Virus record (IMG/VR): IMGVR_UViG_3300046517_002304
Span: 186,001-250,000 of that record
Length of the DNA stretch: 64,000 bases
Direction: 5' to 3' (one strand)
Notes under the pieces: model-generated
What the model was told of the DNA's origin: nothing
The model's database searches: none
Seen by the model: the letters and a program-made list of their open reading frames with translations, nothing else
Program-made: the position numbers and the translations under genes
Shown here: piece after piece, positions 36,693 through 62,125 of the stretch
Layout: every line of letters starts with the position of its first letter
How positions within the stretch are numbered: the stretch's first letter is position 1

Positions 36693-37222
36693 ATGCCGCT
36701 CCCATCTCCTGGTTGAACGGCGCGGCCCTGTCGCACCATATTCCTCATGCCTTGTAAAGCGGCATTATAATCAGGCTGTTGGCCTGGTTGGGTAGCATTT
36801 GCCTTATAGGTTTGTCCATTAAAACTTAATTGTTTACCGTTGCCTGCTTGTAATGCTCGGCCTACGTTGGTGAGGAAGTTTTGAACCTTTGGATCGGTTA
36901 GACCAACCTTTTTTAAATCTCCTTGTAAATCAGTGATTTTTCTAGTTGTCTGCATCACTTGATTGCGTTGTTGGCCTTGTTGAAAATTATTGGATACATT
37001 TTGACCGAAAGACTGTATGCCAGATTTAACCGCTTGTCCTACGGCGTTAACTCCATTGCCGATTGCTTGGCCGATGCCGCCAAGCAACTCGTTATAAATT
37101 TGCTCTTCTGATAATGCATTTTTTCTAGCCAGATACATGGCTACTTCATAAAATTCGTCAAACGATAGCCCAGAGATATCTTCTATATTTTTTTGGATTA
37201 GAAACTCTTTGAATAATTGCAT
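36689..37222 (-). CDS. Gln/Gly-rich hypothetical protein with FKEFL motif
   Basis: MQLFKEFLIQKNIE; TACATA-N4-ATG upstream. Confidence 0.6.
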   Translation of the reverse strand: MQLFKEFLIQKNIEDISGLSFDEFYEVAMYLARKNALSEEQIYNELLGGIGQAIGNGVNAVGQAVKSGIQSFGQNVSNNFQQGQQRNQVMQTTRKITDLQGDLKKVGLTDPKVQNFLTNVGRALQAGNGKQLSFNGQTYKANATQPGQQPDYNAALQGMRNMVRQGRAVQPGDGSGI

Positions 37223-37226
37223 ACTC

Positions 37227-37232
37227 TATGTA
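37227..37232 (-). promoter_or_regulatory. Late-promoter-like TACATA
   Basis: 4 nt before ATG 37222. Confidence 0.4.
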
Positions 37233-37236
37233 TTCC

Positions 37237-37785
37237 TTACATCCCAGGAAAAGGTGGCGGTCCTGCTGGCATCTGCGGAATTTGAGGGCCAATTCGTTTA
37301 TCCATAGAAAACATATCGTGTTGATGCGGCGTAATCATATTCTGTAATTGCCCGGCCATGTCTTGTGCATTAGGATTCTGTATATCCTGCATTTGCTGCT
37401 TGATTTGATTCTGGATAGCGGCAATTTCGTTAGGATTGAATCGGAATGATCTAATGACCCCAAGTGTTTTGTTTAGGACTTCGCAGTCCATCATATGCAT
37501 ATTTCTAATGCCAGTTTTTTTGTAAGTCCTAAAAGAATTATATAAAAACCTATCGCCTTTAATTTTATAGTAGCCAAACGTCTTATCATCGCAAAAATTC
37601 TTAAGTAATTTTCGGACATAAACAAAGGTTAAATAATGTAAGTTTATACCCGCAATCCGTCCGTCTGAATAGATACTTGTTACCAGGACTAGCGGACTCG
37701 GATCGTTTCTGTGGAACAGATATTGAAAGTTAATTAAACTTCCCTTTTGTACGGTTGTACTATAGATTCTGCGGAACGGGATCAT
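37237..37785 (-). CDS. DNA end protector protein (T4 gp2-like)
   Basis: GSLINFQY..DPSPLVLV..GINLHYL..RKLL..FRTY pattern of the gp2 family. Confidence 0.7.
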   Translation of the reverse strand: MIPFRRIYSTTVQKGSLINFQYLFHRNDPSPLVLVTSIYSDGRIAGINLHYLTFVYVRKLLKNFCDDKTFGYYKIKGDRFLYNSFRTYKKTGIRNMHMMDCEVLNKTLGVIRSFRFNPNEIAAIQNQIKQQMQDIQNPNAQDMAGQLQNMITPHQHDMFSMDKRIGPQIPQMPAGPPPFPGM

Positions 37786-37930
37786 CTACAATGGCCAAAT
37801 GGCTTACCCTTTCCTTAATGTTCTTAATTTCTTCCTTGATAGTCTCAAGAACTTGAATTTTTTCGCTTAGTTCTTGCTCACTTTTAGCGGAAGGCTGCTT
37901 CTTTTTAGTTTCCTTAACCTTGCGGGCCAT
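37760..37930 (-). CDS. Small hypothetical protein
   Basis: Likely start MARKVK at 37930 with AGGA upstream. Confidence 0.45.
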   Translation of the reverse strand: MARKVKETKKKQPSAKSEQELSEKIQVLETIKEEIKNIKERVSHLAIVDDPVPQNL

Positions 37931-37971
37931 ATAATTCCTACCAGAAAGGGACAATAATATATATAGCGACA

Positions 37972-37977
37972 TAAATA
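37972..37977 (+). promoter_or_regulatory. Late-promoter-like TAAATA
   Basis: 4 nt before ATG 37982. Confidence 0.6.
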
Positions 37978-37981
37978 CAAT

Positions 37982-38416
37982 ATGCAGAATCCCACAGAGA
38001 TGATTAAGATTGAGTCTAATGGCACATCTATGTCTATTTCATCGCCGCCGAAAGAAGAAGTCAAAGAATTAATTACGGATGAACAGGTATTAGGTCTTGC
38101 CGATGAAATCTTACAAGATATTAGAGATGACGCTACTTCAATAAAAGACGCTTATGAAAGATTCTTTGATATGGTGATGAATGAAGGCGATGCATCATCT
38201 GCTAGCAAAGAGGCTATTGTTAACTTGCTAAAAGTTAAATCAGAAATGTCAGATAAAAAGATAAAGGTAATGGATTTGTATATGCGAGTTAAATTAAGAG
38301 AAAGAGACACTTTCCCTAAATATCTTGTTAATAATCAAAAAAATACTATCGTTAATGGTATGGACAAAAAGAAACTATTAGAGGAAATAACTGAAGATGA
38401 GCACAAAAATAAATAA
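37982..38416 (+). CDS. Helical hypothetical protein (small-terminase-like size and pattern, tentative)
   Basis: 144 aa, amphipathic helices, late-type promoter, divergent from the gp2-like gene. Confidence 0.3.
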   Translation: MQNPTEMIKIESNGTSMSISSPPKEEVKELITDEQVLGLADEILQDIRDDATSIKDAYERFFDMVMNEGDASSASKEAIVNLLKVKSEMSDKKIKVMDLYMRVKLRERDTFPKYLVNNQKNTIVNGMDKKKLLEEITEDEHKNK

Positions 38417-40198: not shown

Positions 40199-40429
40199 TT
40201 AGCGGCCTTTGTTAACAAACTTTTTGAAGGTAATTGGCTCAAAAAGTCCCTTGACTTCTCTAGATGGATCTAGTATAATCTTGTTAACTGCTTTATTGCC
40301 CTCTTGGCTTTTCACTTTACTCCATGCGTTTCGGCGAGTTGAGAGAGTGTACTTTTTAAATGCGGTCTCTAAGGCTTTAGCTATGTCGTCTATCGCCTTT
40401 TTTTGATTATTAGACTCTTGATTACTCAT
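40199..40429 (-). CDS. Small basic hypothetical protein
   Basis: 76 aa; TATATA-N4-ATG upstream; ends ...ITFKKFVNKGR. Confidence 0.55.
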   Translation of the reverse strand: MSNQESNNQKKAIDDIAKALETAFKKYTLSTRRNAWSKVKSQEGNKAVNKIILDPSREVKGLFEPITFKKFVNKGR

Positions 40430-40433
40430 GCCT

Positions 40434-40439
40434 TATATA
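40434..40439 (-). promoter_or_regulatory. Late-promoter-like TATATA
   Basis: 4 nt before ATG 40429. Confidence 0.45.
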
Positions 40440-40608
40440 GTAAGCTCAATTCCAAGCATTTGCCTCCATGAAGGATATAAATATTATAGCACTGCATTTC
40501 CTCCAGTCAGAGCCAAATCATTAATAAGCCATCTCAAATTTATTGCGCATGACAGTATCTTATCATTAGCCGCCGCAGGTAGTAATTCTTTTATACGGAG
40601 TAAAAAAA

Positions 40609-42056: not shown

Positions 42057-42068
42057 GAGAGAACGATC

Positions 42069-44312: not shown

Positions 44313-44441
44313 ATGAAAAAAGATGATCTAATTTGGTACACATTTATGGCCGGAATAGTTTTGTTTATGGCAGCAAGCGTATTTTGCTGTTGGTATTTTG
44401 GCATGCCGGTTAGTGATGACTATCTAATCATTTGCCCTTAA
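44313..44441 (+). CDS. Small single-TM peptide (42 aa, below the track cut-off)
   Basis: MKKDDLIWYTFMAGIVLFMAASVFCCWYFGMPVSDDYLIICP*; AAGGA upstream. Confidence 0.45.
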   Translation: MKKDDLIWYTFMAGIVLFMAASVFCCWYFGMPVSDDYLIICP

Positions 44442-44805
44442 GTTCATGAAATCGGCACGCAACTTCGCCGAACACTTCCATTTTACCCATTAGTTCTTGG
44501 AATTGTTTCTGTGATACTTTTTGTAGCTTGACTTTGGCCTTTAATTTATTGAATTTGCCTTCTAAGAATCCATGAATATCATTTTTTTTAATATGGGAAA
44601 TTGCTTCGTTATACGCGGGCAACTTAGCGAAGAAATGCCAAGCAGTCAACATCGCTAAACCGCCTTTTTCTTTTGACTTGCGAGCTATTTTTTCTGCGCC
44701 TTCTTTGCGATTTTTGCAAAAATCAATAAGAATTTGATTTACGTTTTCTGAATCTTCTGCTTTTTTACTTTCGCATAGATTATATTCTTCGTATCGTATT
44801 AGCAT
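44428..44805 (-). CDS. Hypothetical protein
   Basis: 125 aa; TAAATA 6 nt upstream (44812-44817); N-terminus MLIRYEEYNLCE. Confidence 0.6.
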   Translation of the reverse strand: MLIRYEEYNLCESKKAEDSENVNQILIDFCKNRKEGAEKIARKSKEKGGLAMLTAWHFFAKLPAYNEAISHIKKNDIHGFLEGKFNKLKAKVKLQKVSQKQFQELMGKMEVFGEVACRFHELKGK

Positions 44806-44854
44806 ACGCTATATTTATTATAACTACAATCAAAACCTAAATTAAGGAAAAACC

Positions 44855-45202: not shown

Positions 45203-46017
45203 AATATAAAGTTCATAAGTCCAGTCATCTTGACTTCGCTGGCAGAATCCGTAATGCTAATATAGCCGTTGGCGAACTTTATTTTCATATTTGCGCTTGA
45301 GCCATAGTCTTTATCGGCGTTGTTGCCTTTACTCGGATAAAGCCGCAGCGATTCAGCCTCTGCATCATATTGTCGTTTAATTAAATCGGAGTAAGAGATA
45401 AGACCCGCATCTTTCGTTTTAGTTTTTTCATTTTTATAAAGATGGTATGCCGACACTTTGGCCTCGTTTCTTAGCTCATCTTGCGAAGCATGAATAAATA
45501 CATTATAAAATACGTTAAAGAATATCGGACCTCCTGATACACCAAGTATAGAACTAATTACAGCATGAGGATGCATACTGGCATTGTTGCTTGATAGATA
45601 TACATCTAGTTTTGCCGCGTCAAATCCAGTAGCTTTTTGAAAAGTCCATGAACGTTTTAGTATATCGGATACCTTTTGCTTCATTTCGTTAAATTTAGGT
45701 GTGTTAAATTCTAAAAACCATATAAAATCTAAATCGGCATCTTTGCTATCTGGCCTGACGCTGTAATACGTCTTATCTGCTTTATAGCCCTGTTCTTTAT
45801 TGAACAGGAAATCTTTAATTATACTAAGAACAGCTTTGCTATCTGCGTCTTTTCTTTTGGCCCACGTAAGCACTTTTTTTCTAAAACTAGGCCAGTCATC
45901 ATCGCCGCCCCCGCCCCCACCGCCGTCATAATCATTGTTGTCAGTGTTGTTTATATTTCCTATATCAGAGCCTTTAATAGTGGCGACTGCTTCTAAAAAC
46001 TGCTTAAAGGACTTCAT
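45199..46017 (-). CDS. Hypothetical protein with FKQFLE N-terminal motif
   Basis: Start MKSFKQFLE at 46017, TAATG-coupled to the upstream gene; Gly7/Asp linker. Confidence 0.65.
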   Translation of the reverse strand: MKSFKQFLEAVATIKGSDIGNINNTDNNDYDGGGGGGGDDDWPSFRKKVLTWAKRKDADSKAVLSIIKDFLFNKEQGYKADKTYYSVRPDSKDADLDFIWFLEFNTPKFNEMKQKVSDILKRSWTFQKATGFDAAKLDVYLSSNNASMHPHAVISSILGVSGGPIFFNVFYNVFIHASQDELRNEAKVSAYHLYKNEKTKTKDAGLISYSDLIKRQYDAEAESLRLYPSKGNNADKDYGSSANMKIKFANGYISITDSASEVKMTGLMNFIF

Positions 46018-46550
46018 TACTTGTCCTTCCAAGGCATATCTTTAAATAACCCATATTCATCATCGTTGCCGCCCGTTGGCTCTTGTGGTGTTGATTTTTT
46101 TTGACTTTTATCCATAAATTGTTTAAATGAATAACCAGGAGGCAATTCATTTTTTGGTGGATAAGTGGCGATTACATTATCTCCATGCGCGCTAAAGCCA
46201 AACATTTGTTCGGTTCCGTGCTTAATTTTTTTGAGCACATTGAGCATATCTGATCTATTGATTGGCACTTCAATGAACAAATTGTCTCTAGCTATGTTTC
46301 CTCTAGACATTCTATCCATAAAATAATTAACAATATCCATTACGCCACTTTCTGCTCCGTCTATTTCAAAAATAAAGATGCCTCTTTTGTAGTTGGTCCT
46401 ATATAAGGCGAAAGCATTGACGTTTCCAGCGCCATCAAACGATACGACTCCAGTGTTAGTAGAAATTTTTTTCTCTAAAGCAGGCGTGTAGTTTCTAGAA
46501 ATATCAGCAATTTGGCTCAAGTTCCTGGGTGTAATATTTTGAATTGGCAT
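46017..46550 (-). CDS. Hypothetical protein
   Basis: 177 aa; TAAATA-N4-ATG; YSFKQFMD near the C-terminus. Confidence 0.6.
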   Translation of the reverse strand: MPIQNITPRNLSQIADISRNYTPALEKKISTNTGVVSFDGAGNVNAFALYRTNYKRGIFIFEIDGAESGVMDIVNYFMDRMSRGNIARDNLFIEVPINRSDMLNVLKKIKHGTEQMFGFSAHGDNVIATYPPKNELPPGYSFKQFMDKSQKKSTPQEPTGGNDDEYGLFKDMPWKDK

Positions 46551-46554
46551 GATA

Positions 46555-46560
46555 TATTTA
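46555..46560 (-). promoter_or_regulatory. Late-promoter-like TAAATA
   Basis: 4 nt before ATG 46550. Confidence 0.6.
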
Positions 46561-46561
46561 G

Positions 46562-46589
46562 TTGCATTTTTTTGTTTTTATGATATAAT
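46562..46589 (+). promoter_or_regulatory. Sigma70-type promoter for rtcB
   Basis: TTGCAT-N16-TATAAT with an extended TGn; GGAG at 46598-46601; ATG at 46609. Confidence 0.65.
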
Positions 46590-46608
46590 GCACGGTTGGA
46601 GAAAAATC

Positions 46609-48278: not shown

Positions 48279-48447
48279 AGTCACCCCTGGTTAGTTTAGA
48301 TACGATAATTTCTTTTACGGGTGGAGGGAGTTTAGCCGGAAGCATCTCTTCAGCGAAATAAATGATCTGAGTATTTCCGGCAGGAGCGCCGCAGCCACCA
48401 TGAAGGCAACTAGTGTGTTCTAAGTTATTCAAGTCAAATAGTGGCAT
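48262..48447 (-). CDS. Small hypothetical protein
   Basis: 61 aa; TAAATA-N4-ATG. Confidence 0.5.
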   Translation of the reverse strand: MPLFDLNNLEHTSCLHGGCGAPAGNTQIIYFAEEMLPAKLPPPVKEIIVSKLTRGDFTSQD

Positions 48448-48451
48448 ATAG

Positions 48452-48457
48452 TATTTA
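48452..48457 (-). promoter_or_regulatory. Late-promoter-like TAAATA
   Basis: 4 nt before ATG 48447. A divergent TAAATA at 48474-48479 faces the cyanophycinase-like gene. Confidence 0.55.
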
Positions 48458-48483
48458 TTGTTTGTACTTTATCTAAATATTAA

Positions 48484-49404
48484 TTGATGGCAAAAAATCT
48501 CAAACGATGTTTGTTTTTCATAATTCTATTTGCCATACTCTTCTCATCGCTCCCGCAAGACAAATATAAAAACGGTGCCGTTGTCTTAATAGGCGGCGGA
48601 TATTGTGCAGAGGGCATTGAGTGGCTGTTAAATAAGGCCGAAAGTAGAGAGATGCTCGTGCTATCGTCAGATGACGTATGGATGAGCTGGCTATACAGAC
48701 TTCAGGCCAATACTAAGATAGACTTCTTAATAATACCATCTAGGGATGCCGCTAACTCAGATCAAGTAATTGATAAAATCTATAGAGCTAAATCCATTCT
48801 GATATCCGGAGGCTATCAGAACGATTACATTAAGTTATGGAAAGGAACCAAGCTTGCGGCAGCAATAAGCAAAATGGCTTATAAAATTCCCGTTGGTGGG
48901 TCAAGTGCCGGACTAGCTATTATGGGTGAATTTTACTATTCAGCAAAAAACAATACGGTGATTAGCGATGAAGCGCTATTCAACCCGTATAATGAGTTTA
49001 TGTCTGATATTGATAATAACTTTCTTAAATTACCATTTATGGAAAATATAATTACTGACTCTCATTACGCAGAAAGAGGGCGACAAGGCAGACACTTGGT
49101 CTTCATGGCGAGAATATTAAATGATAGGCATATAGAAAATATTAAAGGAATCGGAATAGATGAAGACACGGCTTTATGCATTGACTACCGGGGAACCACA
49201 ACCGTTTTAGGGAATGGCAAGTGTTATCTTATAGAAAATCTATCTTTCCCGAAGATATGCATTATAGGACAATGCCTAATCTGGAACAGAGCAGCAAGGG
49301 CGTACATCATTAGTTCTGGCACCGTATTTGATATTAATAAATGGAAATTTGAGAGCAGCGAAGTTTGGAGTGTTGAAGACGGGAAACTAGTCCGCGCTAA
49401 TTAG
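48484..49404 (+). CDS. Cyanophycinase-like S51 serine peptidase with signal peptide
   Basis: VLIGGG, ISGGYQ, GGSSAG (Ser), TDSHY (His) and GIGIDEDTA (Glu); hydrophobic N-terminus. Confidence 0.85.
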   Translation: MMAKNLKRCLFFIILFAILFSSLPQDKYKNGAVVLIGGGYCAEGIEWLLNKAESREMLVLSSDDVWMSWLYRLQANTKIDFLIIPSRDAANSDQVIDKIYRAKSILISGGYQNDYIKLWKGTKLAAAISKMAYKIPVGGSSAGLAIMGEFYYSAKNNTVISDEALFNPYNEFMSDIDNNFLKLPFMENIITDSHYAERGRQGRHLVFMARILNDRHIENIKGIGIDEDTALCIDYRGTTTVLGNGKCYLIENLSFPKICIIGQCLIWNRAARAYIISSGTVFDINKWKFESSEVWSVEDGKLVRAN

Positions 49405-50097: not shown

Positions 50098-50982
50098 TTA
50101 GGATACATTAACCGGTTTATTATTGACAACCACTTTAGGCAAGGCGTCTAGTATGGCTTCTATAAGTTTAACCTGCCCATCGTCAACCTTTTCTAGGTAT
50201 ATGAATAAATCTGCTAAGTTTCTAGCATCTGGATGGTATGAGTATCTATTGGCCAGAAGGTGCTGTATGGCTTTTAGCATTTCATCTTCGGAATCGCCCA
50301 GTACATGCTTTGTGAGAGCAAAGTAATCTCTTTTAAATTGGGCTACTCTTACGCCAAATTCATGCGGCATTAAATAATATTTAACAGTATTTTTTTCATC
50401 TCTGTCAAGGTCTGAATTATCAATATCGGCATCAGTAAATTGTCTAATAAGTCGCTCTTTAAAAGTATTTTGGGCAGCGTGCGTTAGCTCGTGTGCCAGT
50501 GCTTCTTCTTCATCTTTTTTAGCAACTACGCAGAAAGGATTGCCGATTGCGTCGTTGGAGCAAAAGGCTACATTGCCCGTTAACTTACCCTTTAGCTCAT
50601 CTGGACTTACGTTTATAACTGGAACGTACTGCATCATTCTAATCTGGTTAAACACCATGCCGCTTTTGGCATCTGCGGGTTTTTGAGCCTTAACTGCATT
50701 GCTTATTGCACTATCAGTTTTATCACCATAAAAACCATGTATTACATCTAGTGGTTTATAAAAAGCAATTTGATCTGGGTTTAAATTATACCCATATGTT
50801 TTTTTAACATATTGAATTAAGTCGGCCTTTCTCTCAACTTCTGTTGCCTTATCAGGATGAATCCGAGATACCTTTGGCATTATACCCATCATGGCTGTGC
50901 CGATTACTAATGGACTTGCTATTTTACGAAGCCTGCTGTTCATAAGACCCTCAGTTTGAATTAGCCATTCTCTAAATCGCAT
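50098..50982 (-). CDS. Zincin-like (HExxH) metallopeptidase-domain protein with FREWL motif
   Basis: ALAHELTHAAQ (50479-50493) and downstream PHEF; N-terminus MRFREWLIQTE. Confidence 0.65.
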   Translation of the reverse strand: MRFREWLIQTEGLMNSRLRKIASPLVIGTAMMGIMPKVSRIHPDKATEVERKADLIQYVKKTYGYNLNPDQIAFYKPLDVIHGFYGDKTDSAISNAVKAQKPADAKSGMVFNQIRMMQYVPVINVSPDELKGKLTGNVAFCSNDAIGNPFCVVAKKDEEEALAHELTHAAQNTFKERLIRQFTDADIDNSDLDRDEKNTVKYYLMPHEFGVRVAQFKRDYFALTKHVLGDSEDEMLKAIQHLLANRYSYHPDARNLADLFIYLEKVDDGQVKLIEAILDALPKVVVNNKPVNVS

Positions 50983-50986
50983 GAAT

Positions 50987-50992
50987 TATTTA
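50987..50992 (-). promoter_or_regulatory. Late-promoter-like TAAATA
   Basis: 4 nt before ATG 50982. Confidence 0.6.
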
Positions 50993-52410: not shown

Positions 52411-53107
52411 AACTAACACTATCGCCGAACTGAAAAGATTTTTGCTGATAGTAAGGGTGTAGCTTTTGCGTTTCTATGTCCTTAACTTGTTGGTTGGCAA
52501 CATTACCGTATTGAGTAGACGGTGATTGTGATGGCTTTCCGCCGTTTTCTAATTCTGGAAGAGTAAAAGTATAATTTTTTTTTGTGGAGTAAACATAAAC
52601 ATAGAACTCTTCGTTCTCATCAAATTCTTCGCTCCCACCCTCTTGTTCAATAATTTCCCCTAATCCATCGGCTATTTCTTTTATGTCTTTCGGCATGAGA
52701 GTCCATGTTTCCACATGATCGTTTCTAACCGCTTTCCATCCGTATTGCTTTATGACATATTCTCTAGAATCTCCGCGACCCTCAGCAATGGCGAACATAT
52801 CTGCCGGAATTTTATGCTTGGCTAATGATTTGTCGATAAGTTTTTTTCGTCTTTGATTATCATTAAGTATTTTCAGAGCGCTAATTTCATACTGATTTAA
52901 TTCGCCTTCTTCGTCATCAATAATCTTCTCTACAAATTCGTCCCAGTCCACATACTCATTATTAATGAACTCATCAAGTCCATATGCGCCAATTACTTGG
53001 CGCATAACGAAATCTGTGGCTATAAAATCATGATTCTTATCGCCTGTGTCGCCATCTGCGAAATCTACTTCGCCTCCGATAATCCAGTATTCTCCAGTTA
53101 TTGCCAT
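52379..53107 (-). CDS. Acidic hypothetical protein with C-terminal FKGWL motif
   Basis: 242 aa; TATATA-N4-ATG (53112-53117). Confidence 0.6.
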   Translation of the reverse strand: MAITGEYWIIGGEVDFADGDTGDKNHDFIATDFVMRQVIGAYGLDEFINNEYVDWDEFVEKIIDDEEGELNQYEISALKILNDNQRRKKLIDKSLAKHKIPADMFAIAEGRGDSREYVIKQYGWKAVRNDHVETWTLMPKDIKEIADGLGEIIEQEGGSEEFDENEEFYVYVYSTKKNYTFTLPELENGGKPSQSPSTQYGNVANQQVKDIETQKLHPYYQQKSFQFGDSVSFKGWLLKERS

Positions 53108-53123
53108 ACTTTATATAGGAAAT

Positions 53124-56230: not shown

Positions 56231-56983
56231 TTAGTTATTGTTATGATAATATAAGCTAAAATTACCGTCATTATCTTCAATGATAGCAGAACAACTTTCA
56301 ACAAAATCGCCACAATTCATGTATTTAAACCCATTGATGTCTTTGATTTCAGCATGATGAATATGTCCGCATATAACTCCATCACATCCATTTTTAATGC
56401 CGTATGAGACAAGACAATCCTCAAAATCAGACATATAATTAACTGCGCTTTTTACATTATACTTGACCGCCTTGCTTAAAGACCACTTTTTAAATCTAAA
56501 TATCTGCCTTATTTTATTCACCAGGTGATTTAGCCTAAGTAAAAACTCATACCCTATGTCACCTAAAACACACAGCCACTTAGCGTGTTTTGTAACTAAA
56601 TCAAATGCATCGCCATGAATAACCATCATTTTTTTGCCGGCAGCGCTTTCGTGTATGACTTCGTTAGTAATTGTTATATTTCCAAAACTTAAAATATGAT
56701 ATTGATCGATAAATTTTCTAATAAACTCATCGTGGTTTCCAGCGATTAAATAAACCTTAGTGCCTCGTTTTATGAAGCCAAAAATCTTTCTAATAAGAAG
56801 CGTAGCGTTATCGTCCCAATACCAATTTCTTTTTAATTTCCATCCGTCAATAAAATCGCCAACGATATAGATAAATTCTGGCTCGTCCTTTTTGACGGAT
56901 GTTAAAAAATCAATTAGCTCTTTTGTGTGAGCATGCCTAGATCCAAGATGTATATCGCTAATAAATAGGCTACGTATTTTCAT
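56231..56983 (-). CDS. LpxH-like (UDP-2,3-diacylglucosamine hydrolase family) metallophosphoesterase
   Basis: SDIHLG, VGDFIDGW, GNHDE, HGDAFD, CGHIH and NCGDFVE. Confidence 0.88.
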   Translation of the reverse strand: MKIRSLFISDIHLGSRHAHTKELIDFLTSVKKDEPEFIYIVGDFIDGWKLKRNWYWDDNATLLIRKIFGFIKRGTKVYLIAGNHDEFIRKFIDQYHILSFGNITITNEVIHESAAGKKMMVIHGDAFDLVTKHAKWLCVLGDIGYEFLLRLNHLVNKIRQIFRFKKWSLSKAVKYNVKSAVNYMSDFEDCLVSYGIKNGCDGVICGHIHHAEIKDINGFKYMNCGDFVESCSAIIEDNDGNFSLYYHNNN

Positions 56984-58019
56984 TTACTATATTTATGACC
57001 TTTTGAACTCCATTTACCATTTTACTTTCTGATGGCTTAAAATTATTGACGAAATTAATAACCACTTTTTCATTTAACTTACTGGCGCTGCAACTTTGTC
57101 CAATCTTTAATTTGTCAACATAGAATGCATTTATATGCTGTTCATACTGGCCTGGTTCTGGAACAACCAGCATTGGTTTGTTGTAGAATCTAGCCTCTGT
57201 TATCAACTGATTACCTGCTGTAGATATTACACATTGACAATTTGCCAAGTCTTTGATAAAGAACGGAGACAAGCCATGAAAACTAAAGTTTTCTTTATCA
57301 AAGAAGTAGTTTTTGTTTTTGTTATCTATATGCCCATAAACATGGAGCGGTATATTTAGATTTCTAAGAGAATCAAGTATTATATCGCTTACGGTTCCAC
57401 GAAGATACACTAGGACAAAGCCTTTATTACTAGGGGTAATTTGGTCCATTCCCTTCCTTAGTAGACCGTATGTAAGCGAAACATTTGGATTGTTTGGAGT
57501 TAAGTTATCAAAGTTGAAAGTAGAAATAATAGTTTTATATGGATTGGGCACCATATACTCTACGGTAAGTTTCGCCATTCGGCAATATAGCTTTAAAAAG
57601 GCAGGAAGATCTGATAAATCGCAATCAAGAAAGCGATGCTGATTATCAACGGATATAAATTTTTTATTTAACAGATTGGCAACTCTCGGCATAGATGGCT
57701 CAAAATCCGTCATGAATAGGCATGGGTTTAATTCATCTGCTTTGGTCTTTATGTAATCTAAGTTCTTTTTAATCTCATGTTTAAAGAAATTATAAGTAGT
57801 TAATCCAGTCTTTAGATAATTAACGTGATTATGTCTGTAAGAAAACAAAATGCCGGCAATGTTATGTCTATTCTGGTATTTTATAGTTTTTAAAAATTCG
57901 TAAGCTTTGCCAAATGTAAAAATATGAAATTCATATTCTGGCATGTGCTCTACAACAGAGAGAGTTCTTGTGATATGACCTAGACCTTCGCCAGCAACAC
58001 CATAGAAGATTCTTTTCAT
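56970..58019 (-). CDS. MJ1255/VC2487-like GT-B glycosyltransferase
   Basis: IFYGVAGEGLGHITR, TDFEP, VDNQH, ISTAGNQLITEA and GQYEQHINA. Confidence 0.85.
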   Translation of the reverse strand: MKRIFYGVAGEGLGHITRTLSVVEHMPEYEFHIFTFGKAYEFLKTIKYQNRHNIAGILFSYRHNHVNYLKTGLTTYNFFKHEIKKNLDYIKTKADELNPCLFMTDFEPSMPRVANLLNKKFISVDNQHRFLDCDLSDLPAFLKLYCRMAKLTVEYMVPNPYKTIISTFNFDNLTPNNPNVSLTYGLLRKGMDQITPSNKGFVLVYLRGTVSDIILDSLRNLNIPLHVYGHIDNKNKNYFFDKENFSFHGLSPFFIKDLANCQCVISTAGNQLITEARFYNKPMLVVPEPGQYEQHINAFYVDKLKIGQSCSASKLNEKVVINFVNNFKPSESKMVNGVQKVINIVNENT

Positions 58020-58023
58020 ATTG

Positions 58024-58029
58024 TATCTA
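58024..58029 (-). promoter_or_regulatory. Late-promoter-like TAGATA
   Basis: 4 nt before ATG 58019. Confidence 0.4.
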
Positions 58030-58078
58030 TATGAAGCACGGTCATACTGTTAGTATTTTTTATTAAGTGTTTTAAAAA

Positions 58079-60193
58079 TTAAACAGTTTGCGAAAGCTGA
58101 TAGGCCGTAAAGTTTTTATTTGCCGTTTTGTCTCTCGGTTCTAAAACAATTTTTGCGTGGATTTTCATCATCGGCTCTTGGAACTCTGGATCTTTTGTCC
58201 TTACCGATGTTTGAATTGCCTTTTTTAGAATTGGCATCATTTCAGATTCAAATTTAGAATTATACTCTACGCTTACATTATTATGTTCGTCCGAATGCAA
58301 TATCACCAATCCCTTTTCATCATATGCAACACCAACAGATATCTCGGATGCGGCGGCATATATGTCTTCGTTATCTGGCTCTGCCTCATATTTCCAACTT
58401 TCTTCTTCTTCCTCTTGTTTTAGTTGCTTAATCTTCCACTCAACATACTCATTATAATACTTTGTTTTTATTAGTTGCTCAAGGTCTTCATTTGAAATAT
58501 CATCTGGTACATCAAGCGATTCATCGCTAGCAAAATCATCCATGTCATATCCAATATCATTCATTACTTCTTCTTTATCTTCTCCGTAAGATTCCGATGG
58601 CTTAGATTCAACGTTTCCCTGAGCTTTCTCCATAGCAGCTTCATATGCGTCATCGTGTACTTCGTCAAAATCAACTATTTCATTTGAGATAAAATCTTCT
58701 TCATCTATGCTGTCGCCTCTGTAGGAAACGTATTTATCTGGTACGTCTTCCCATGTTTTCATGCCATCCTTAAGCACTAGGTATTTCCACGCAAGCTCGC
58801 CTATAATAAACTTATTGTTTTCGGTTTTTTGTCGCGCAGCTTCCTTTCTGTCTTCGTCTGCCTTAGTATGTTGGGCATGGGCATCATCTATATGAGCCAT
58901 TATTCTAGGATCAATCTGGAGATACTTAGAAAGCTCTTTTATGTTTGTTACAGCATGCTTTTCCAGTGGCTCGCCAGGATTCTCTAAATATGAATTTAGT
59001 TCTTGCGTATACTCTTGCTTAAATTTGTTAAATTGTGATGGAATAAGAGACTCTAGGGCGGCAGAGTGTTTAAAAATATTTATTGCATCGTAATAACTCT
59101 GTTCACGTATATTTTCTATAACATCATTTACGTTATCGTCTAAAAATTTGGCTATGTAAAAGATTACAGAGCCTCTATTGGTTTTGTCTGCCGCAGCCTT
59201 GTTCATAATATCATACAGATACTTGTTATCTTTACTAACAGCCCGAATAAAGAAATGTAGTATTTCATCATCGGCATAACTGGCTTTTATAAATTTACTT
59301 ACATCATTTAAAGGCACTCTGGTATTGGCTGGCTTAATGTCTAGAGCAGGATGCTTTCTCCCTCCAGAAACCGTTGTGCCGACACCATTGATTCTATGCA
59401 TTACCATTTCGTGTGCATTAGGATATCCTTTTAACATTGTATCTGCTAAAAACTTTAAGTAAGCTACATTATTGTTATATTCATTTTGCCATTTGTCTTT
59501 CGCCTCATGACCAGTTTTGCTATGGACGGTTTCTATAGTACGTCCACTCATCCTATCTCTAATTTCATAAAACTCCATTAAATCATTATCGATCAACGGT
59601 TTAGCAGCCTGCTTCATCATGTCAAGAACGCCATCAATAGCATGTTGCGGGTGTTCGTTTCTAAAAAAGTAAGACCAAGAACCAGATGCTTTTGATACAG
59701 AAATGCCAGTAGTGATTTTTTGTGCATTGGATGCGCCAGCCTTAATGTCTGGGACTGCCGAAACTTTATGCTGAGTGTCCTGCGCATTCTTAAACTTATT
59801 TAATAAATCCTGTTTTTCAGGTTCAAACTCATCGCTTTTAATGTTCTTAACAATATTAGACCAGTCTGATTCGCCTTCTTTATATGGAACCGGCTTACCG
59901 GCCTTAGATTGTAATAACGGCGCTAAAGTTTTGATAAAGCTAATGTCTACGCCTTTTCCTGCCTCAATAGGATTAGTTTTGGTAATGCCAACGTGTGTCG
60001 GCCTCTGACTTATAGAAACATATCCTACTCTTCTTGCTTGATACGGTGCAATAAAATAAGTAGACCATTCGGTATCCGTCTGATAGTTGAACTCTTTAAT
60101 GAAATGTGGCTCAACGACATGAAGAGTGGATTCGCCTATCCCATCTTGGATGACGATGCTTTCTGATAACAGGAGCCACTCTTTGAAATTCAT
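58079..60193 (-). CDS. Large hypothetical protein with FKEWL N-terminal motif and acidic C-terminal third
   Basis: 704 aa; MNFKEWLLLSE; TAAATA-N4-ATG. Confidence 0.65.
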   Translation of the reverse strand: MNFKEWLLLSESIVIQDGIGESTLHVVEPHFIKEFNYQTDTEWSTYFIAPYQARRVGYVSISQRPTHVGITKTNPIEAGKGVDISFIKTLAPLLQSKAGKPVPYKEGESDWSNIVKNIKSDEFEPEKQDLLNKFKNAQDTQHKVSAVPDIKAGASNAQKITTGISVSKASGSWSYFFRNEHPQHAIDGVLDMMKQAAKPLIDNDLMEFYEIRDRMSGRTIETVHSKTGHEAKDKWQNEYNNNVAYLKFLADTMLKGYPNAHEMVMHRINGVGTTVSGGRKHPALDIKPANTRVPLNDVSKFIKASYADDEILHFFIRAVSKDNKYLYDIMNKAAADKTNRGSVIFYIAKFLDDNVNDVIENIREQSYYDAINIFKHSAALESLIPSQFNKFKQEYTQELNSYLENPGEPLEKHAVTNIKELSKYLQIDPRIMAHIDDAHAQHTKADEDRKEAARQKTENNKFIIGELAWKYLVLKDGMKTWEDVPDKYVSYRGDSIDEEDFISNEIVDFDEVHDDAYEAAMEKAQGNVESKPSESYGEDKEEVMNDIGYDMDDFASDESLDVPDDISNEDLEQLIKTKYYNEYVEWKIKQLKQEEEEESWKYEAEPDNEDIYAAASEISVGVAYDEKGLVILHSDEHNNVSVEYNSKFESEMMPILKKAIQTSVRTKDPEFQEPMMKIHAKIVLEPRDKTANKNFTAYQLSQTV

Positions 60194-60197
60194 ACCT

Positions 60198-60203
60198 TAT
60201 TTA
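60198..60203 (-). promoter_or_regulatory. Late-promoter-like TAAATA
   Basis: 4 nt before ATG 60193. Confidence 0.6.
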
Positions 60204-60231
60204 CTTTGGAAGACAATCTTTCTACAACTGA

Positions 60232-60239
60232 TATAAATA
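60232..60239 (+). promoter_or_regulatory. T4-type late promoter TATAAATA
   Basis: Exact consensus, 4 nt before ATG 60244. Confidence 0.75.
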
Positions 60240-60243
60240 CTAT

Positions 60244-61593
60244 ATGAACTTCAAGGTGTGGCTAGAAGCAATACTAGACCCAAATGTAAAATACTTAGGT
60301 AAATACCCTAACGATTACGGCGATAAAAAGCCACGCCTTGGTAGGGGAGCTTATCTTAAACTAGATACTAATGGTCGCGTCACATCCTTAACCCAAGACG
60401 ATTGGGAACGGGGCACTCCATATATACAAATACAGCCGAATCACTCAATATCTTTGCACAAGATAAGCCCTCAATCGCCTGATTTTGCTAAAATTATAAA
60501 AGCATTAAAGCCAAAGTTCCATGATATAGGAAATTGGCAAGTTGAGTATTTCTTTATGGCAAGCCATTTAGTAACCGGTAATGAAAAATATTATCGTACA
60601 GTAGATTACTGGCTTAAACATACTGTTAATATTAACGATACCTTGCCCGAATTCTTTTATCACGGAACATCCACCAATCAGTGGTATGAAGGCATTAAGA
60701 AAAATGGCTTACTACCAAGAAATATTACCGGATCTGCCGGAGGGTATGGTTCACAAAACGCAAGTTCTTTAAGCAAAAAAGGTATAGTTTATCTTTCTAC
60801 TCATCCCGACGCGGCCACAAGAACCGCAGCAGAACAGGCGGCAAACAAACATGGTGGAGTGCCGCTGATACTGAAAATCAATAGTTCTGGGATATTCAAG
60901 GATAAATTAGTACCAGATGAAGATTCAAGGCAACCAAATGCCCAAAAGTCAATCGTTAAAATGTCAACTGTAGGATATGAAGGGCGAGTACCTCCATCGG
61001 CCATAGAGCCATTTTTACTTGGTAATGAATATGAAAAAAATAGTCGGCTTTATACTAAATGGGAAAAATTTAAAGACGTTCCAGTTGCCGAACATCCATT
61101 AACCGCACGTTTAAAATCTGGAATGACGCCATACAGCAATGATCCAGAATACTATATTTTGAGGGATGCGGGAATTATTAAAAGAGAAAAAACAAGAAAC
61201 CCTACTAGTGGCTGGCCATCTGAAAACGACGTTCAAACTAGAGAAGTAAGCGACGAAGAGTTACGCAAATTACTTAAAAATGGTGGGTGGGCAAACACTG
61301 CTAGGGCGATTAGTACTGATTTAAACAATGGCTATCAAGGATGCATATACAGCTTAAAAGACATCACCCTGCCGCCTAACATGTCGCCAGAATCGGAAAG
61401 TATAATTAAGATGCTAACTGACAGTAGGCTATGCGGCACTGATACTCGGGGCGAAAAGAGGTATATCTATTTAAACAACTACGATTCAATGGATAGGGTA
61501 ATTGCCTTAGCTAAACTTCTACATGCTAAAAAGATGGACATGGACGATCTATGCCGAGAAATAAAAACTATTACGGCGTTGCCATTAGACTGA
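60244..61593 (+). CDS. ADP-ribosyltransferase/Tpt1-fold domain protein with FKVWLE motif
   Basis: FYHGTS..IKKNGLLP..VYLST..A..A..LILKI..VPPSAI. Confidence 0.7.
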   Translation: MNFKVWLEAILDPNVKYLGKYPNDYGDKKPRLGRGAYLKLDTNGRVTSLTQDDWERGTPYIQIQPNHSISLHKISPQSPDFAKIIKALKPKFHDIGNWQVEYFFMASHLVTGNEKYYRTVDYWLKHTVNINDTLPEFFYHGTSTNQWYEGIKKNGLLPRNITGSAGGYGSQNASSLSKKGIVYLSTHPDAATRTAAEQAANKHGGVPLILKINSSGIFKDKLVPDEDSRQPNAQKSIVKMSTVGYEGRVPPSAIEPFLLGNEYEKNSRLYTKWEKFKDVPVAEHPLTARLKSGMTPYSNDPEYYILRDAGIIKREKTRNPTSGWPSENDVQTREVSDEELRKLLKNGGWANTARAISTDLNNGYQGCIYSLKDITLPPNMSPESESIIKMLTDSRLCGTDTRGEKRYIYLNNYDSMDRVIALAKLLHAKKMDMDDLCREIKTITALPLD

Positions 61594-62115
61594 CATTAAG
61601 TGAGTTCTTTGAATCTGCTTGCCTACCCCGCCTGGCGGAGGTAATGGCGAAGGTGGATTCCTATCATCATCGCCGCCATTATCGTTATCATGGCCATTAT
61701 AAAAGCCATAAATAGCATTCTCAATAAAATGCACAACTTGCGCCGGCGATTTCAATGGAGTTTGAGGATGTAAATTGTCTGCTATGGAATGAGATAAATT
61801 ATCTCTCTGCATTCTTAGATTTACGAAAAACTTAAGGAACTTATTACCAGTAGCGTGGTCATATTGTAAATTATCCACATCATCGCCAGCGGCCTTATCA
61901 ACCACAACATCTACAGTGGCAAGAAATACGTCATTCTTATGAATACCTCTTCCAGTAAAAGATAGGCGATTATGAAAGCTATATTTTGGATCAAAGTTTA
62001 CTTCTTTCCAATCCATAGTCCAATTACCGGCTATATGTTTGGAAAAAGCTTGCTTAAAATCATTGGCTAAATTAGATAATGATTGGCTATGCTCAACAAA
62101 TAGTTTAAACTTCAT
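61585..62115 (-). CDS. Hypothetical protein with FKLFVE motif
   Basis: MKFKLFVE; TAAATA-N4-ATG; D/G/P-rich tail. Confidence 0.6.
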   Translation of the reverse strand: MKFKLFVEHSQSLSNLANDFKQAFSKHIAGNWTMDWKEVNFDPKYSFHNRLSFTGRGIHKNDVFLATVDVVVDKAAGDDVDNLQYDHATGNKFLKFFVNLRMQRDNLSHSIADNLHPQTPLKSPAQVVHFIENAIYGFYNGHDNDNGGDDDRNPPSPLPPPGGVGKQIQRTHLMSV

Positions 62116-62119
62116 ATAC

Positions 62120-62125
62120 TATTTA
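62120..62125 (-). promoter_or_regulatory. Late-promoter-like TAAATA
   Basis: 4 nt before ATG 62115. Confidence 0.6.

What the first reader, a model, noticed from the sequence alone, without database searches (positions are those of the whole stretch)
37222..62125. TA(A/T/C/G)ATA exactly 4 nt before ATG: T4-like late promoters that would give leaderless mRNAs
Seen: TAAATA-N4-ATG at starts 37982+, 46550-, 48447-, 50982-, 60193-, 60244+ (full TATAAATA) and 62115-. TATATA-N4-ATG at 40429- and 53107-, TACATA-N4-ATG at 37222-, and TAGATA-N4-ATG at 58019-. Other spacings of TAAATA occur before 1857, 16251, 27084 (full TATAAATA), 32176, 35336, 44805 and 56221. The N4 cases leave no room for a Shine-Dalgarno after the element. 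Known: the T4 late promoter TATAAATA is a -10-only element read by gp55, with +1 about 5-6 nt downstream. Inference: transcription starts within a base or two of the ATG, so late genes would be translated leaderless. Caveat: single hexamers are common in AT-rich DNA; the fixed spacing is the evidence.
Basis: partly seen in the sequence, partly recalled or inferred. Interest (0 to 1): 0.72.

Follow-up and report, generated by a model that had tools for sequence, protein, structure and literature searches.

The report
Late-type promoters abutting start codons
In a 511-kb soil phage and its uncultured relatives, a T4-late-like promoter hexamer TA(A/T)ATA sits exactly 4-5 bases before the ATG of about 7% of genes, which most likely means these genes are transcribed by host RNA polymerase with a phage gp55-like sigma factor into mRNAs that begin at the start codon and have no ribosome-binding leader.

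Summary
All 11 listed TANATA-N4-ATG sites exist and all sit at gene starts. A twelfth match, at 52360-52372, is chance. The window count alone is weak: 12 matches against 6.2±2.6 in shuffles. The whole genome is decisive. TAAATA lies 4 nt before 31 of 826 called starts, against about 0.65 per position elsewhere. TAAATA-N4-ATG occurs 44 times against about 12 expected, and N3 and N5 sit at expectation.

Motif genes lack Shine-Dalgarno sequences, which half of the other genes have. They use ATG only and have a pyrimidine at -1 in 46 of 47 cases. They are six times enriched at divergent gene junctions (p=2e-8). Two follow strong terminators directly. The same arrangement, at spacing 4-6, recurs in five related huge-phage genomes. 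T4 itself has none at N4; its TATAAATA lies 13-34 nt from the ATG.

The genome encodes a 156-aa, region-2-only, gp55-family sigma and a Gp23-type capsid protein. No phage RNA polymerase, gp33 or gp45 was detected.

Best reading: a compact -10-only promoter that gives leaderless mRNAs. This is a new variant of T4-type late transcription. No transcript data exist, so start sites and timing are inferred.

The parts
37220..37232 (-). TACATA-N4-ATG at the start of gene 36689-37222 (177 aa). The N-terminus MQLFKEFL resembles the N-terminus of T4 internal proteins.
37972..37984 (+). TAAATA-N4-ATG at the start of gene 37982-38416 (144 aa). It sits at a divergent junction whose intergenic gap is only 9 nt.
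40427..40439 (-). TATATA-N4-ATG at the start of gene 40199-40429 (76 aa), at a divergent junction.
46548..46560 (-). TAAATA-N4-ATG at the start of gene 46017-46550 (177 aa). The hexamer lies inside codons 3-4 of the divergent RtcB gene (46549-47985). The two ATGs share the tetranucleotide CATG.
48445..48457 (-). TAAATA-N4-ATG at the start of gene 48262-48447 (61 aa), at a divergent junction.
48474..48489 (+). TAAATA-N7-ATG at gene 48487-49404 (305 aa), the divergent partner of the previous site. It is a looser-spacing candidate that would give a leader of about 2-3 nt.
50980..50992 (-). TAAATA-N4-ATG at the start of gene 50098-50982 (294 aa, N-terminus MRFREWL). The divergent gap is 9 nt.
53105..53117 (-). 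TATATA-N4-ATG at the start of gene 52379-53107 (242 aa), 16 nt after the upstream gene on the same strand.
58017..58029 (-). TAGATA-N4-ATG at the start of gene 56970-58019 (349 aa).
60191..60203 (-). TAAATA-N4-ATG at the start of gene 58079-60193 (704 aa, N-terminus MNFKEWL). It is one half of a back-to-back pair within a 50-nt intergenic region.
60234..60246 (+). TAAATA-N4-ATG (here the full TATAAATA) at the start of gene 60244-61593 (449 aa, N-terminus MNFKVWL). It is the other half of the back-to-back pair.
62113..62125 (-). TAAATA-N4-ATG at the start of gene 61585-62115 (176 aa, N-terminus MKFKLFV).
62412..62425 (+). TATATA-N5-ATG at the start of gene 62423-63622 (399 aa, N-terminus MRFSQFL). 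This is the gap-5 variant, with T at -1.
27082..27096 (-). TAAATA-N6-ATG (full TATAAATA) at gene 26668-27084 (138 aa). This is the first gene, after a divergent junction, of the minus-strand baseplate/tail gene run.
44803..44817 (-). TAAATA-N6-ATG at gene 44428-44805 (125 aa), at a divergent junction. Its G005 orthologue has the element at gap 4.
56981..56995 (-). TAAATA-N6-ATG at gene 56231-56983 (250 aa).
1855..1868 (-). TAAATA-N5-ATG if gene 802-1863 actually starts at 1857 (N-terminus MALRFKEW) rather than at the first ATG, 1863. This is a candidate only.

Best explanation
TA(A/T)ATA is the -10-like, and only, element of a phage-specific promoter class. It is read by host core RNA polymerase carrying the phage's 156-aa gp55-family sigma, which has region 2 and no region 4. 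The hexamer sits 4 nt (less often 5-6) upstream of the A of the start codon, with a pyrimidine at -1. Transcription therefore initiates at or within a base or two of that A. The mRNA has no 5' leader and no Shine-Dalgarno sequence, and it must be translated by the leaderless pathway (5'-terminal AUG, 70S or IF2-dependent initiation).

The class covers about 47 genes at gap 4 and about 65 at gaps 4-6, out of 826. It is confined to the mixed-strand half of the genome (0-250 kb, plus 428-491 kb). It heads many very short divergent intergenic regions. It is enriched for tail-fibre-like structural proteins and for proteins whose N-terminus resembles that of T4 internal proteins. It is therefore probably a late or virion-protein class.

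Shown: the motif, its spacing and its statistics; its context; its conservation in the clade; and the presence of the sigma. Inferred: the start site, which sigma reads the element, the timing, and the mode of translation.
For: 1. Position lock. TAAATA at gap 4 occurs before 31 genes against 0.65 background. TAAATA-N4-ATG occurs 44 times against about 12 expected, with N3 and N5 at expectation.
2. The ATG is the real start. 70% of the matches are the first ATG of a called gene, against 4% of all ATGs. 43 of 47 have no in-frame alternative start upstream. Orthologue alignments begin within a few residues of it.
3. No SD. Only 6% of motif genes have a >=4-nt SD match, against 50% of other genes and 17% of random windows. 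The other genes use AGGAG, which is 15-fold enriched.
4. The -1 base is T in 36, C in 10, A in 1 and G in 0, against 55% pyrimidine in other genes (p=7e-11). In gap-5 sites the pyrimidine stays next to the ATG in 21 of 22 cases. This is the Y(-1)R(+1) start-site rule (established knowledge) anchored on the A of the ATG.
5. The excess is for ATG only, with none for GTG or TTG. About 13% of AGGAG-led starts are non-ATG.
6. 25 of 47 motif genes are first after a divergent junction, against 125 of 777 others (OR 5.9, p=2e-8). Intergenic gaps are often 9-50 nt or even overlapping, which leaves no room for a leader.
7. Two strong intrinsic terminators are followed within 15-24 nt by the motif and the ATG.
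8. There is no conservation upstream of -12, so no -35 element. This fits a region-2-only sigma.
9. The sigma candidate's only PHROG hit is phrog_234, 'late sigma transcription factor' (1e-10). It has Sigma70_r2 only. hhalign to T4 gp55 is collinear over residues 4-119 (E 7e-4). It keeps the counterparts of gp55 N13, F86 and T99, and an aromatic residue at Y97 (with residue roles).
10. No phage RNA polymerase domains were found.
11. There is a T4-superfamily capsid gene, Gp23 (E 5e-87).
12. The same hexamer is the top or near-top hexamer at -10..-5 of gene starts in the related contigs G001, G002 and G003, and it peaks at gaps 4-6 in G005 and LR756511 too. The sigma is present in G001, G003 and LR756511.
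13. In the T4 control, TATAAATA lies 13-34 nt from the ATG and there is no TAAATA-N4-ATG at all.
14. A TA-like signal about 10 bp upstream of the start codon is the accepted computational signature of leaderless genes (PMC3160421).
Against: - No transcript 5' ends are available, because no RNA run was listed.
- T4 geometry places the hexamer at -11..-6, which is 5 spacer bases. The dominant class has 4, so it would need initiation one base closer to the hexamer than in T4.
- gp33 and a sliding clamp were not detected.
- The link between this sigma and this motif is only co-occurrence. phrog_234 also cross-hits cellular sigma factors (control). A profile search of the PDB found only generic sigma region 2 at E>0.02. 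The AlphaFold model was too poor to use (pLDDT 52).
- Away from start codons, sense-strand TAAATA is not clearly commoner than antisense (21 against 14). The element is therefore not demonstrably active as a leadered promoter.
- The major capsid gene itself is SD-led and has no hexamer nearby.
- The host is unknown, so its competence for leaderless translation is unknown.
Confidence: 0.72

Rival explanations
1. The hexamer is an RNA-level translation-initiation signal, that is, a non-SD ribosome-binding or enhancer element, or the site of a phage translational activator. It would lie in a leader transcribed from promoters further upstream, and the mRNAs would be leadered.
For: - The spacing is fixed relative to the ATG, and these genes have no SD. 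Either model predicts both.
- AU-rich leaders are known to help SD-independent initiation (established knowledge).
- Orthologues swap between this motif and an SD, as if the two were alternative initiation signals.
Against: - The six-fold enrichment at divergent junctions, with gaps of 9-50 nt or overlapping starts, would require unseen promoters inside the neighbouring coding sequence. No second conserved element exists upstream of -12.
- Two sites lie directly after strong terminators.
- The pyrimidine at -1 and the strict five-of-six base invariance look like protein-DNA recognition and start-site selection, not AU-richness.
- The hexamer matches the core of the T4 late promoter, and a gp55-family sigma is encoded.
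Confidence: 0.12
2. The element is a promoter, but it is read by something other than the gp55-like protein. Candidates are the phage's second sigma (215 aa, regions 2 and 4), a host alternative sigma, or host sigma-A modified by a phage factor. The mRNAs would still be leaderless.
For: - A second phage sigma with r2 and r4 exists at G000 457.4-458.0 kb.
- Thermus phages make leaderless late transcripts with host RNAP and distinct -10 elements, apparently through phage factors.
- The assignment of this sigma to this motif rests on co-occurrence only.
Against: - No -35-like conservation is present for an r4-bearing sigma to read.
- The hexamer ends in A, where sigma-70-type -10 elements have their most conserved T (established knowledge).
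- The hexamer equals positions 3-8 of the gp55 target.
- The gp55-like sigma and the motif co-occur in G000, G001, G003 and LR756511.
Confidence: 0.12
3. It is chance, composition or an annotation artefact. On this view, AT-rich hexamers accumulate before start codons, or copies were inherited through duplication of paralogous genes.
For: - Inside the window the raw count is only about twice the shuffle mean, and 1 of 100 shuffles reaches it.
- Seven motif genes are paralogues.
- About 19 share a similar N-terminal peptide.
Against: - The genome-wide excess is limited to one spacing and one hexamer, with N3, N5 and single-base variants at background.
- There are 40 independent protein groups among the 47 genes, with unrelated flanks.
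- The arrangement recurs in five other genomes whose shared proteins are only 38-48% identical.
- It is absent in T4.
Confidence: 0.02

Closest known systems
Bacteriophage T4 late promoters (TATAAATA) read by gp55, with gp33 and the gp45 clamp
   Same: - Both are -10-only elements with no -35 conservation.
- The hexamer equals positions 3-8 of the T4 box.
- A is preferred (55%) at the position of T4's pocket-bound A(-12).
- The spacer is AT-rich.
- A small region-2-only gp55-family sigma is encoded.
- The capsid gene is of the T4 Gp23 type.
   Different: - The first T of the 8-mer is not conserved, and the 8-mer is not enriched.
- No gp33 or gp45 was detected.
- In T4 the box lies 13-34 nt from the ATG with an SD in between, and N4 never occurs. 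Here it lies 4-5 nt away with no SD.
[quoted passage not shown] 2011, PMC3160421)
   Same: A -10-like TA signal sits at a sharply peaked distance of about 10 bp from the start codon, SD is absent, and SD-led genes coexist in the same genome.
   Different: - There the signal is the housekeeping sigma's TANNNT, about 12 bp upstream. Here it is TA(A/T)ATA, starting at -10 and ending in A. It is specific to a phage clade and probably read by a phage sigma.
Leaderless transcripts of Thermus phages YS40 and Lalka27a (bioRxiv 10.64898/2026.04.20.719267) and, from my own recollection and not checked here, P23-45 and lambda cI from PRM
   Same: Phage genes whose mapped 5' end is the A or G of the initiator codon, with class-specific -10 elements attributed to phage modification of host RNAP.
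   Different: - Those hosts use leaderless mRNAs generally, and most phage transcripts are leaderless.
- Their -10 elements are different (for example TAGGGT).
- Here only about 7% of genes are in the class, next to a majority using AGGAG SD, and the element is T4-late-like.
T4 internal proteins IPI, IPII and IPIII and their N-terminal capsid-targeting sequence
   Same: 23 otherwise unrelated proteins start with M-x(1,2)-F-[KRQ..]-E/Q-W/F-L, like T4 MKTYQEFIAE and MKTFKEF. 19 of the 23 carry the promoter motif.
   Different: - Targeting and cleavage are untested here.
- T4's own ip genes are SD-led, with no TATAAATA within 80 nt.

Membership tests
T4-type late transcription system | Promoter is a -10-positioned box with no -35 element | tested here: met
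   Conservation is confined to -11..+3, and nothing upstream of -12 is conserved. The T4 description is taken from PMC2988020.
T4-type late transcription system | 8-bp consensus TATAAATA | tested here: not met
   Only the last six bases are conserved. Position 2 is A in 26 of 47 sites, and position 1 is T in 7 of 47. The 8-mer occurs 49 times against 65 for the reversed control. Only 2 gap-4 sites carry the full 8-mer.
T4-type late transcription system | gp55-family sigma (region-2 homology, no region 4) | tested here: met
   The candidate is a 156-aa ORF at G000 95290-95760(+). Its sole PHROG hit is phrog_234 (1e-10). It has Sigma70_r2 only (24.6 bits). hhalign to T4 gp55 gives E 7e-4 and is collinear from the N-terminus. 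Caveat: phrog_234 also rings in cellular genomes (control), and the PDB profile search found only generic sigma r2.
T4-type late transcription system | gp33 co-activator | tested here: inconclusive
   T4 gp33 used as a query finds nothing in G000 at E<=10. gp33 is short and diverges fast, and the tool itself warns that an empty answer shows nothing.
T4-type late transcription system | gp45-type sliding clamp as activator | tested here: not met
   phrog_223 gives no match at E<=1, and the DnaN C-terminal domain PF02768 gives no match. A very divergent clamp cannot be excluded.
T4-type late transcription system | Box at -13..-6, that is, 5 nt between its last base and +1 | not testable with these tools
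   The geometry follows from the flipped bases -12, -9 and -8 in the gp55 open complex. Here the spacer to the A of the ATG is 4 nt (dominant), 5 or 6. The true +1 is unknown because there are no RNA data.
Leaderless (TA-led) genes | -10-like signal with a sharp positional peak about 10 bp before the start codon | tested here: met
   The criterion is from PMC3160421.
Leaderless (TA-led) genes | No Shine-Dalgarno sequence between the signal and the start codon | tested here: met
   6% of motif genes have a >=4-nt SD match in -18..-4, against 50% of other genes. A spacer of 4-5 nt leaves no room for one.
Leaderless (TA-led) genes | Start codon is AUG and is the first possible start | tested here: met
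   The excess is for ATG only. 43 of 47 have no in-frame upstream alternative, and 22 have an in-frame stop at -6..-4.
Leaderless (TA-led) genes | Mapped transcript 5' end at the start codon | not testable with these tools
   No RNA run was listed for this sequence.
T4 internal-protein-like capsid-targeted proteins | Conserved N-terminal targeting peptide on otherwise unrelated proteins | tested here: met
   23 genes match the N-terminal pattern. They are not related by BLASTP. The T4 ipI, ipII and ipIII N-termini were verified in the T4 record. The concept is from PMC3012670.
T4 internal-protein-like capsid-targeted proteins | Packaging into the prohead and cleavage by a gp21-type prohead protease | not tested
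   I did not search for a prohead protease, and no virion proteome exists.

The most novel reading that the evidence does not exclude
A whole clade of uncultured 0.3-0.6-Mb T4-superfamily soil phages has moved its gp55-type late promoter hard up against the start codon. A defined regulon would then be made as leaderless mRNAs in a host that otherwise uses AGGAG Shine-Dalgarno sequences. The regulon includes tail fibres and some twenty diverse proteins whose N-termini resemble T4 internal proteins, which could be packaged anti-defence proteins. This would couple a transcriptional switch to a switch in translation-initiation mode. Late in infection the phage could favour 70S or leaderless initiation, or survive host or phage attacks on SD-dependent initiation. 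It would also let promoters be embedded in neighbouring coding sequence, giving intergenic regions of zero length.
Probability: 0.3. Interest if true: 0.78.

Novelty: new variant of a known kind. Interest (0 to 1): 0.62.

Why it matters
If the start sites are where the sequence says, this is the first T4-type (gp55-family) late promoter class found to produce leaderless mRNAs. It would also be the first regulon-scale use of leaderless translation by a phage outside the Thermus phages, in a genome that otherwise depends on Shine-Dalgarno sequences.

It offers a simple, testable rule for annotating start codons and transcription units in huge-phage metagenomes: TA(A/T)ATA, then N3-4, then Y-ATG. 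It explains how these genomes tolerate divergent genes with 0-50-nt intergenic regions.

It also marks out about 20 candidate capsid-internal (ejected) proteins. In T4, proteins of this kind are anti-restriction factors.

Finally, it opens a question that can be put directly to experiment: do huge phages shift the host ribosome between initiation modes during infection?

Tried and rejected
- **Transcript evidence.** Two run searches (any kind, then RNA) found only soil and rhizosphere DNA metagenomes and no RNA run. I did not use read laying, because DNA reads cannot show start sites.
- **Close relatives.** A search with a single motif-gene protein found nothing in GenBank phages or IMG/VR. 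Relatives were reached only through a baseplate-hub alignment.
- **Two large proteins in LR756511.** Two similar-sized proteins behind TAAATA-N4 there are not homologues of the G000 proteins I compared them with. Gene-level conservation was therefore tested by local best-hit BLAST instead. It is modest (OR 8.9, p=0.007) and shows much turnover between the motif and an SD.
- **Structure route for the sigma.** The AlphaFold2 model from 5 sequences reached pLDDT 52, so no fold search was run. The PDB profile search gave only weak generic sigma hits.
- **Function of the window's motif genes.** PHROGs found nothing for 9 of 10.
- **Hexamer as a leadered promoter elsewhere.** The sense/antisense bias is not significant (21 against 14), and there is no Y-R pattern after distal copies. 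Only the sheath gene and the gene after it have a plausible distal copy plus an SD.
- **Hexamer TAA as the upstream gene's stop codon (termination-reinitiation).** This holds for only 3 of 22 same-strand cases, so I rejected it.
- **Phage-encoded RNA polymerases.** Neither a phiKZ-like multisubunit enzyme nor a T7-like one was found. The T7-like search has no positive control.
- **Literature.** I found no paper linking TAAATA, late promoters and leaderless mRNAs in phages.

Full report
**What the sequence is.** The window is bases 186,001-250,000 of a 511,233-bp IMG/VR virus record with direct terminal repeats and 38% G+C. It is a tailed phage.
- The window encodes baseplate and tail proteins (Tail_P2_I, Phage_base_V) and an RtcB ligase.
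- The genome encodes a T4-type Gp23 major capsid protein (PF07068, E 4.8e-87) and a contractile sheath.
- The only GenBank relative is LR756511.1, an unannotated 595-kb 'uncultured phage'.
- DNA runs that hold the sequence are soil and rhizosphere metagenomes.
- No multisubunit or T7-like RNA polymerase domain was found, so host RNA polymerase is presumably used.

**Observation.** All 11 sites exist, and each ATG is the first ATG of a gene in my codon-usage-based calls (826 genes). A twelfth match, at 52360-52372, is a chance hit: it opens a 26-codon frame and has A at -1.

The window count alone is not compelling: 12 against 6.2 +/- 2.6 in shuffles.
- TAAATA lies exactly 4 nt before 31 gene starts, and TANATA before 47. 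No other distance has more than 6 (10). Non-start ATGs show no peak.
- Independently of any gene calls, TAAATA-N4-ATG occurs 44 times against about 12 expected. N3 and N5 occur 11 times each.
- The hexamer is specific. Only its third base varies (A 31, T 11, C 3, G 2), and all other single-base variants are at background.
The -1 base is T or C in 46 of 47 sites, -2 is G or A in 38 of 47, and -11 is A in 26 of 47.
- There is a shoulder at gap 5 (9 more TA[AT]ATA genes) and at gap 6 (9). In the gap-5 sites of G000 and its relatives the pyrimidine stays next to the ATG in 21 of 22.

**Two modes of gene start.** Half of the other genes carry a Shine-Dalgarno match in -18..-4; AGGAG is 15-fold enriched and AAGGA 11-fold. 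Only 6% of the motif genes have such a match, which is below the random level of 17%. The excess is for ATG only, with none for GTG or TTG (3 against 5 expected; 8 against 12.5). About 13% of AGGAG-led long ORFs begin with TTG or GTG. In 43 of 47 motif genes no alternative in-frame start exists upstream. In 22 the last two bases of the hexamer plus the next base form an in-frame stop just before the ATG. The ATG is therefore the initiation codon, with at most 4-5 untranslated bases between it and a conserved DNA element.

**Promoter or RNA signal?** Several features point to a promoter.
- 25 of 47 motif genes are the first gene after a divergent junction, against 125 of 777 others (odds ratio 5.9, p=2e-8).
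- The intergenic regions are tiny: a median of 36 nt, several of 9 nt, and two cases where the divergent ATGs overlap. The hexamer for gene 46017-46550 lies inside codons 3-4 of the divergent RtcB gene. Genes 58079-60193 and 60244-61593 share a 50-nt spacer that holds two back-to-back elements.
- Intrinsic terminators are rare in this genome, but two strong ones (G000 428.4 kb and 491.0 kb) are followed within 15-24 nt by the hexamer and the ATG.
- Nothing upstream of -12 is conserved.
- The pyrimidine at -1 followed by A is the general preference of bacterial RNA polymerase for its start site (established knowledge). It travels with the ATG rather than with the hexamer. This is what one expects if +1 is the A and the distance from the -10 element to +1 can flex by a base.
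- A TA-like signal peaking about 10 bp before the start codon is the accepted computational signature of leaderless genes (PMC3160421).

The termination-reinitiation idea fails. The hexamer supplies the upstream gene's stop codon in only 3 of 22 same-strand cases.

**Relation to T4.** The T4 late promoter is an 8-bp box about one helical turn upstream of +1, with no -35 element (PMC2988020). In the gp55 open complex the bases at -12, -9 and -8 are flipped into pockets (PMC7892883). This places TATAAATA at -13..-6, and its last six bases, TAAATA, at -11..-6. Here the hexamer would be at -10..-5 (gap 4) or -11..-6 (gap 5) if +1 is the A of the ATG. That is the same geometry, or one base tighter.

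The genome encodes a 156-aa protein (G000 95290-95760).
- Its only PHROG hit is phrog_234, 'late sigma transcription factor', which is the T4 gp55 family (1e-10).
- It has Sigma70 region 2 but no region 4.
- A profile of it and four homologues aligns collinearly with T4 gp55 from the N-terminus (residues 4-119 to 9-125, E 7e-4). It keeps the counterparts of gp55 N13, F86 and T99, and an aromatic residue at Y97, all residues named as base-pocket residues.
- Homologues occur only in uncultured huge phages: G001, G003 (two copies), LR756511 and a 634-kb contig.

The differences from T4 are real.
- The 8-mer is not enriched (49 against 65 for the control), and its first base is not conserved.
- gp33, the gp45 clamp and a DnaN-type clamp were not detected.
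- T4 itself has no TAAATA-N4-ATG at all (0 against 7 for the control). Its 24 TATAAATA boxes that precede ORFs lie 13-34 nt from the ATG, most often 25-28 nt.

The clade therefore keeps the core of the T4 late element and a gp55-like factor, but has moved the promoter against the start codon.

**Conservation.** An alignment of the baseplate hub with its LR756511 homologue retrieved 39 IMG/VR loci, 37 of them 35-48% identical. I fetched and analysed four large contigs.
- G002: TAAATA at gap 4/5 = 11/4. It is the commonest hexamer at -10..-5.
- G001: 5/5.
- G005: 3/1 (TANATA 6/2).
- G003: TANATA 21/20/12 at gaps 4/5/6, against about 3 elsewhere.
- In G001, G002 and G005 every gap-4 site has a pyrimidine at -1.
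- A 100-kb piece of LR756511 shows the same clustering.

At the level of individual orthologues the class is only partly conserved (4 both, 8+7 one side, 125 neither; OR 8.9, p=0.007). Orthologues that lack the hexamer carry an SD instead. Promoter positions therefore turn over, and the two initiation modes are interchangeable through evolution.

**Which genes, and when?** The motif genes are confined to the mixed-strand part of the genome (0-250 kb: 40 of 47; 428-491 kb: 7). The 250-428-kb block of several hundred small, minus-strand genes has none at gap 4.

The motif genes include:
- a seven-member family of large virion or tail-fibre-like proteins (PHROG 8510, 'virion structural protein'), next to an unrelated 475-aa right-handed beta-helix protein that also carries the motif;
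- in the window, the heads of the tail and baseplate gene runs, which carry the hexamer at looser spacing (gaps 6, 11 and 14).

23 genes encode proteins that begin M-x(1,2)-F-[KRQ..]-[EQ..]-[WF]-[LI], for example MNFKEWL, MKTFQEWL and MRFREWL. 19 of these carry the hexamer at gap 4-6 (OR 78, p=5e-19). The association recurs in G002 (8 of 11) and G001 (3 of 3). The proteins are otherwise unrelated, and the codons vary synonymously, so the constraint looks to be on the peptide.

The peptide resembles the N-termini of T4 internal proteins: IPII and IPIII (MKTYQEFIAE) and IPI (MKTFKEF), verified in the T4 record. This is the capsid-targeting sequence shared by otherwise diverse T4 internal proteins (PMC3012670). 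It suggests a large set of packaged proteins.

It does not by itself prove late timing. T4's own ip genes are SD-led, with no late box within 80 nt. The major capsid gene here is also SD-led. 'Late' therefore remains an inference, resting on the promoter type, the structural genes and the genome partition.

**Mechanism proposed.** Host core RNA polymerase plus the gp55-like sigma opens the TA(A/T)ATA element and initiates with ATP at the A of the ATG. The transcript has no leader. It is translated by the leaderless route, in which a 70S ribosome or a 30S-IF2-fMet-tRNA complex recognises a 5'-terminal AUG (established knowledge). Downstream genes in the same unit use SD sequences or start/stop overlaps.
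- Confidence that this is a promoter giving leaderless or near-leaderless mRNAs: about 0.7.
- Confidence that the class is late: about 0.6.

**What could not be done.** No RNA run holds the sequence. The host is unknown. The sigma model was too poor for fold comparison.

**Novelty.** Leaderless phage transcripts are known from Thermus phages, and T4 late promoters are a classic system. I found no report combining the two, and none of this motif. I rate it a new variant of a known kind.

Noticed in passing
Outside the window: G000 250,613-409,231, mostly minus strand: There is a second start-codon-locked element. The 9-mer TAGTTATCC (extended form tTAGTTATCCaTaa) occurs 147 times against about 4 expected, nearly all on the minus strand. 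It is confined to the unidirectional block of small genes that lacks the TAAATA element. A start codon follows at N10 (39 times) or N13 (15 times), without an SD. It is absent (0-2 copies) from relatives G001, G002, G003 and G005 and from 100 kb of LR756511. It probably marks a different (early or middle?) promoter or regulatory class.
   Followed up: partly
window 37222-, 46017-, 50982-, 60193-, 60244+, 62115-, 62423+ (gene starts); 23 genes genome-wide: Otherwise unrelated proteins share an N-terminus of the form M-x-x-F-K-E-W/F-L. It resembles the capsid-targeting sequence of T4 internal proteins IPI-III. 19 of the 23 carry the TA(A/T)ATA element (OR 78). The same association holds in relatives G002 and G001. 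They may be a large set of packaged or ejected proteins.
   Followed up: partly
window 46548-46551 and 6736-6737; also G000 89394/89395 and 259073/259074: Divergent gene pairs have start codons that overlap back to back on the palindrome CATG, so the intergenic length is -2. Any promoter for either gene must lie inside the other gene's coding sequence.
   Followed up: no
window 1894+, 27124+, 35412+; G000 54826-, 89394+, 101404+, 183021+: Several divergent-junction genes that lack TA(A/T)ATA and an SD instead end their upstream region in ...TAttaT/TAaatT-AGT(G/A)C(T)-ATG. This looks like a sigma-70-type TANNNT about 5-6 nt before the ATG. TAGT at gap 2 occurs 12 times against about 4-5 background. 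It may be a second, host-type leaderless promoter class.
   Followed up: no
G000 161,684-163,135(-) and 153,450-153,632(-): The genome has a T4-type Gp23 major capsid gene (E 4.8e-87), so the phage belongs to the T4 superfamily despite its 511-kb size. A second, short Gp23-like stretch contains two stop codons (one TAG, one TAA) and may be a decayed paralogue.
   Followed up: no
G000 97,164-100,072(-): The tail sheath gene and the gene after it each have a TAAATA about 50 nt upstream, followed by c-a at the +4/+5 positions and then an SD (GGAGA, AGGAG). These may be rare T4-style leadered uses of the same element.
   Followed up: partly
window 802-1863(-): The first ATG (1863) gives MFMALRFKEW. 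TAAATA-N5 precedes the third ATG (1857), which gives MALRFKEW, a T4-internal-protein-like N-terminus. The annotated start may therefore be 6 nt too far upstream.
   Followed up: no
G000 457.4-458.0 kb(-): There is a second phage sigma factor of 215 aa with regions 2 and 4 (phrog_351, 8e-28). Its promoters are unidentified.
   Followed up: no
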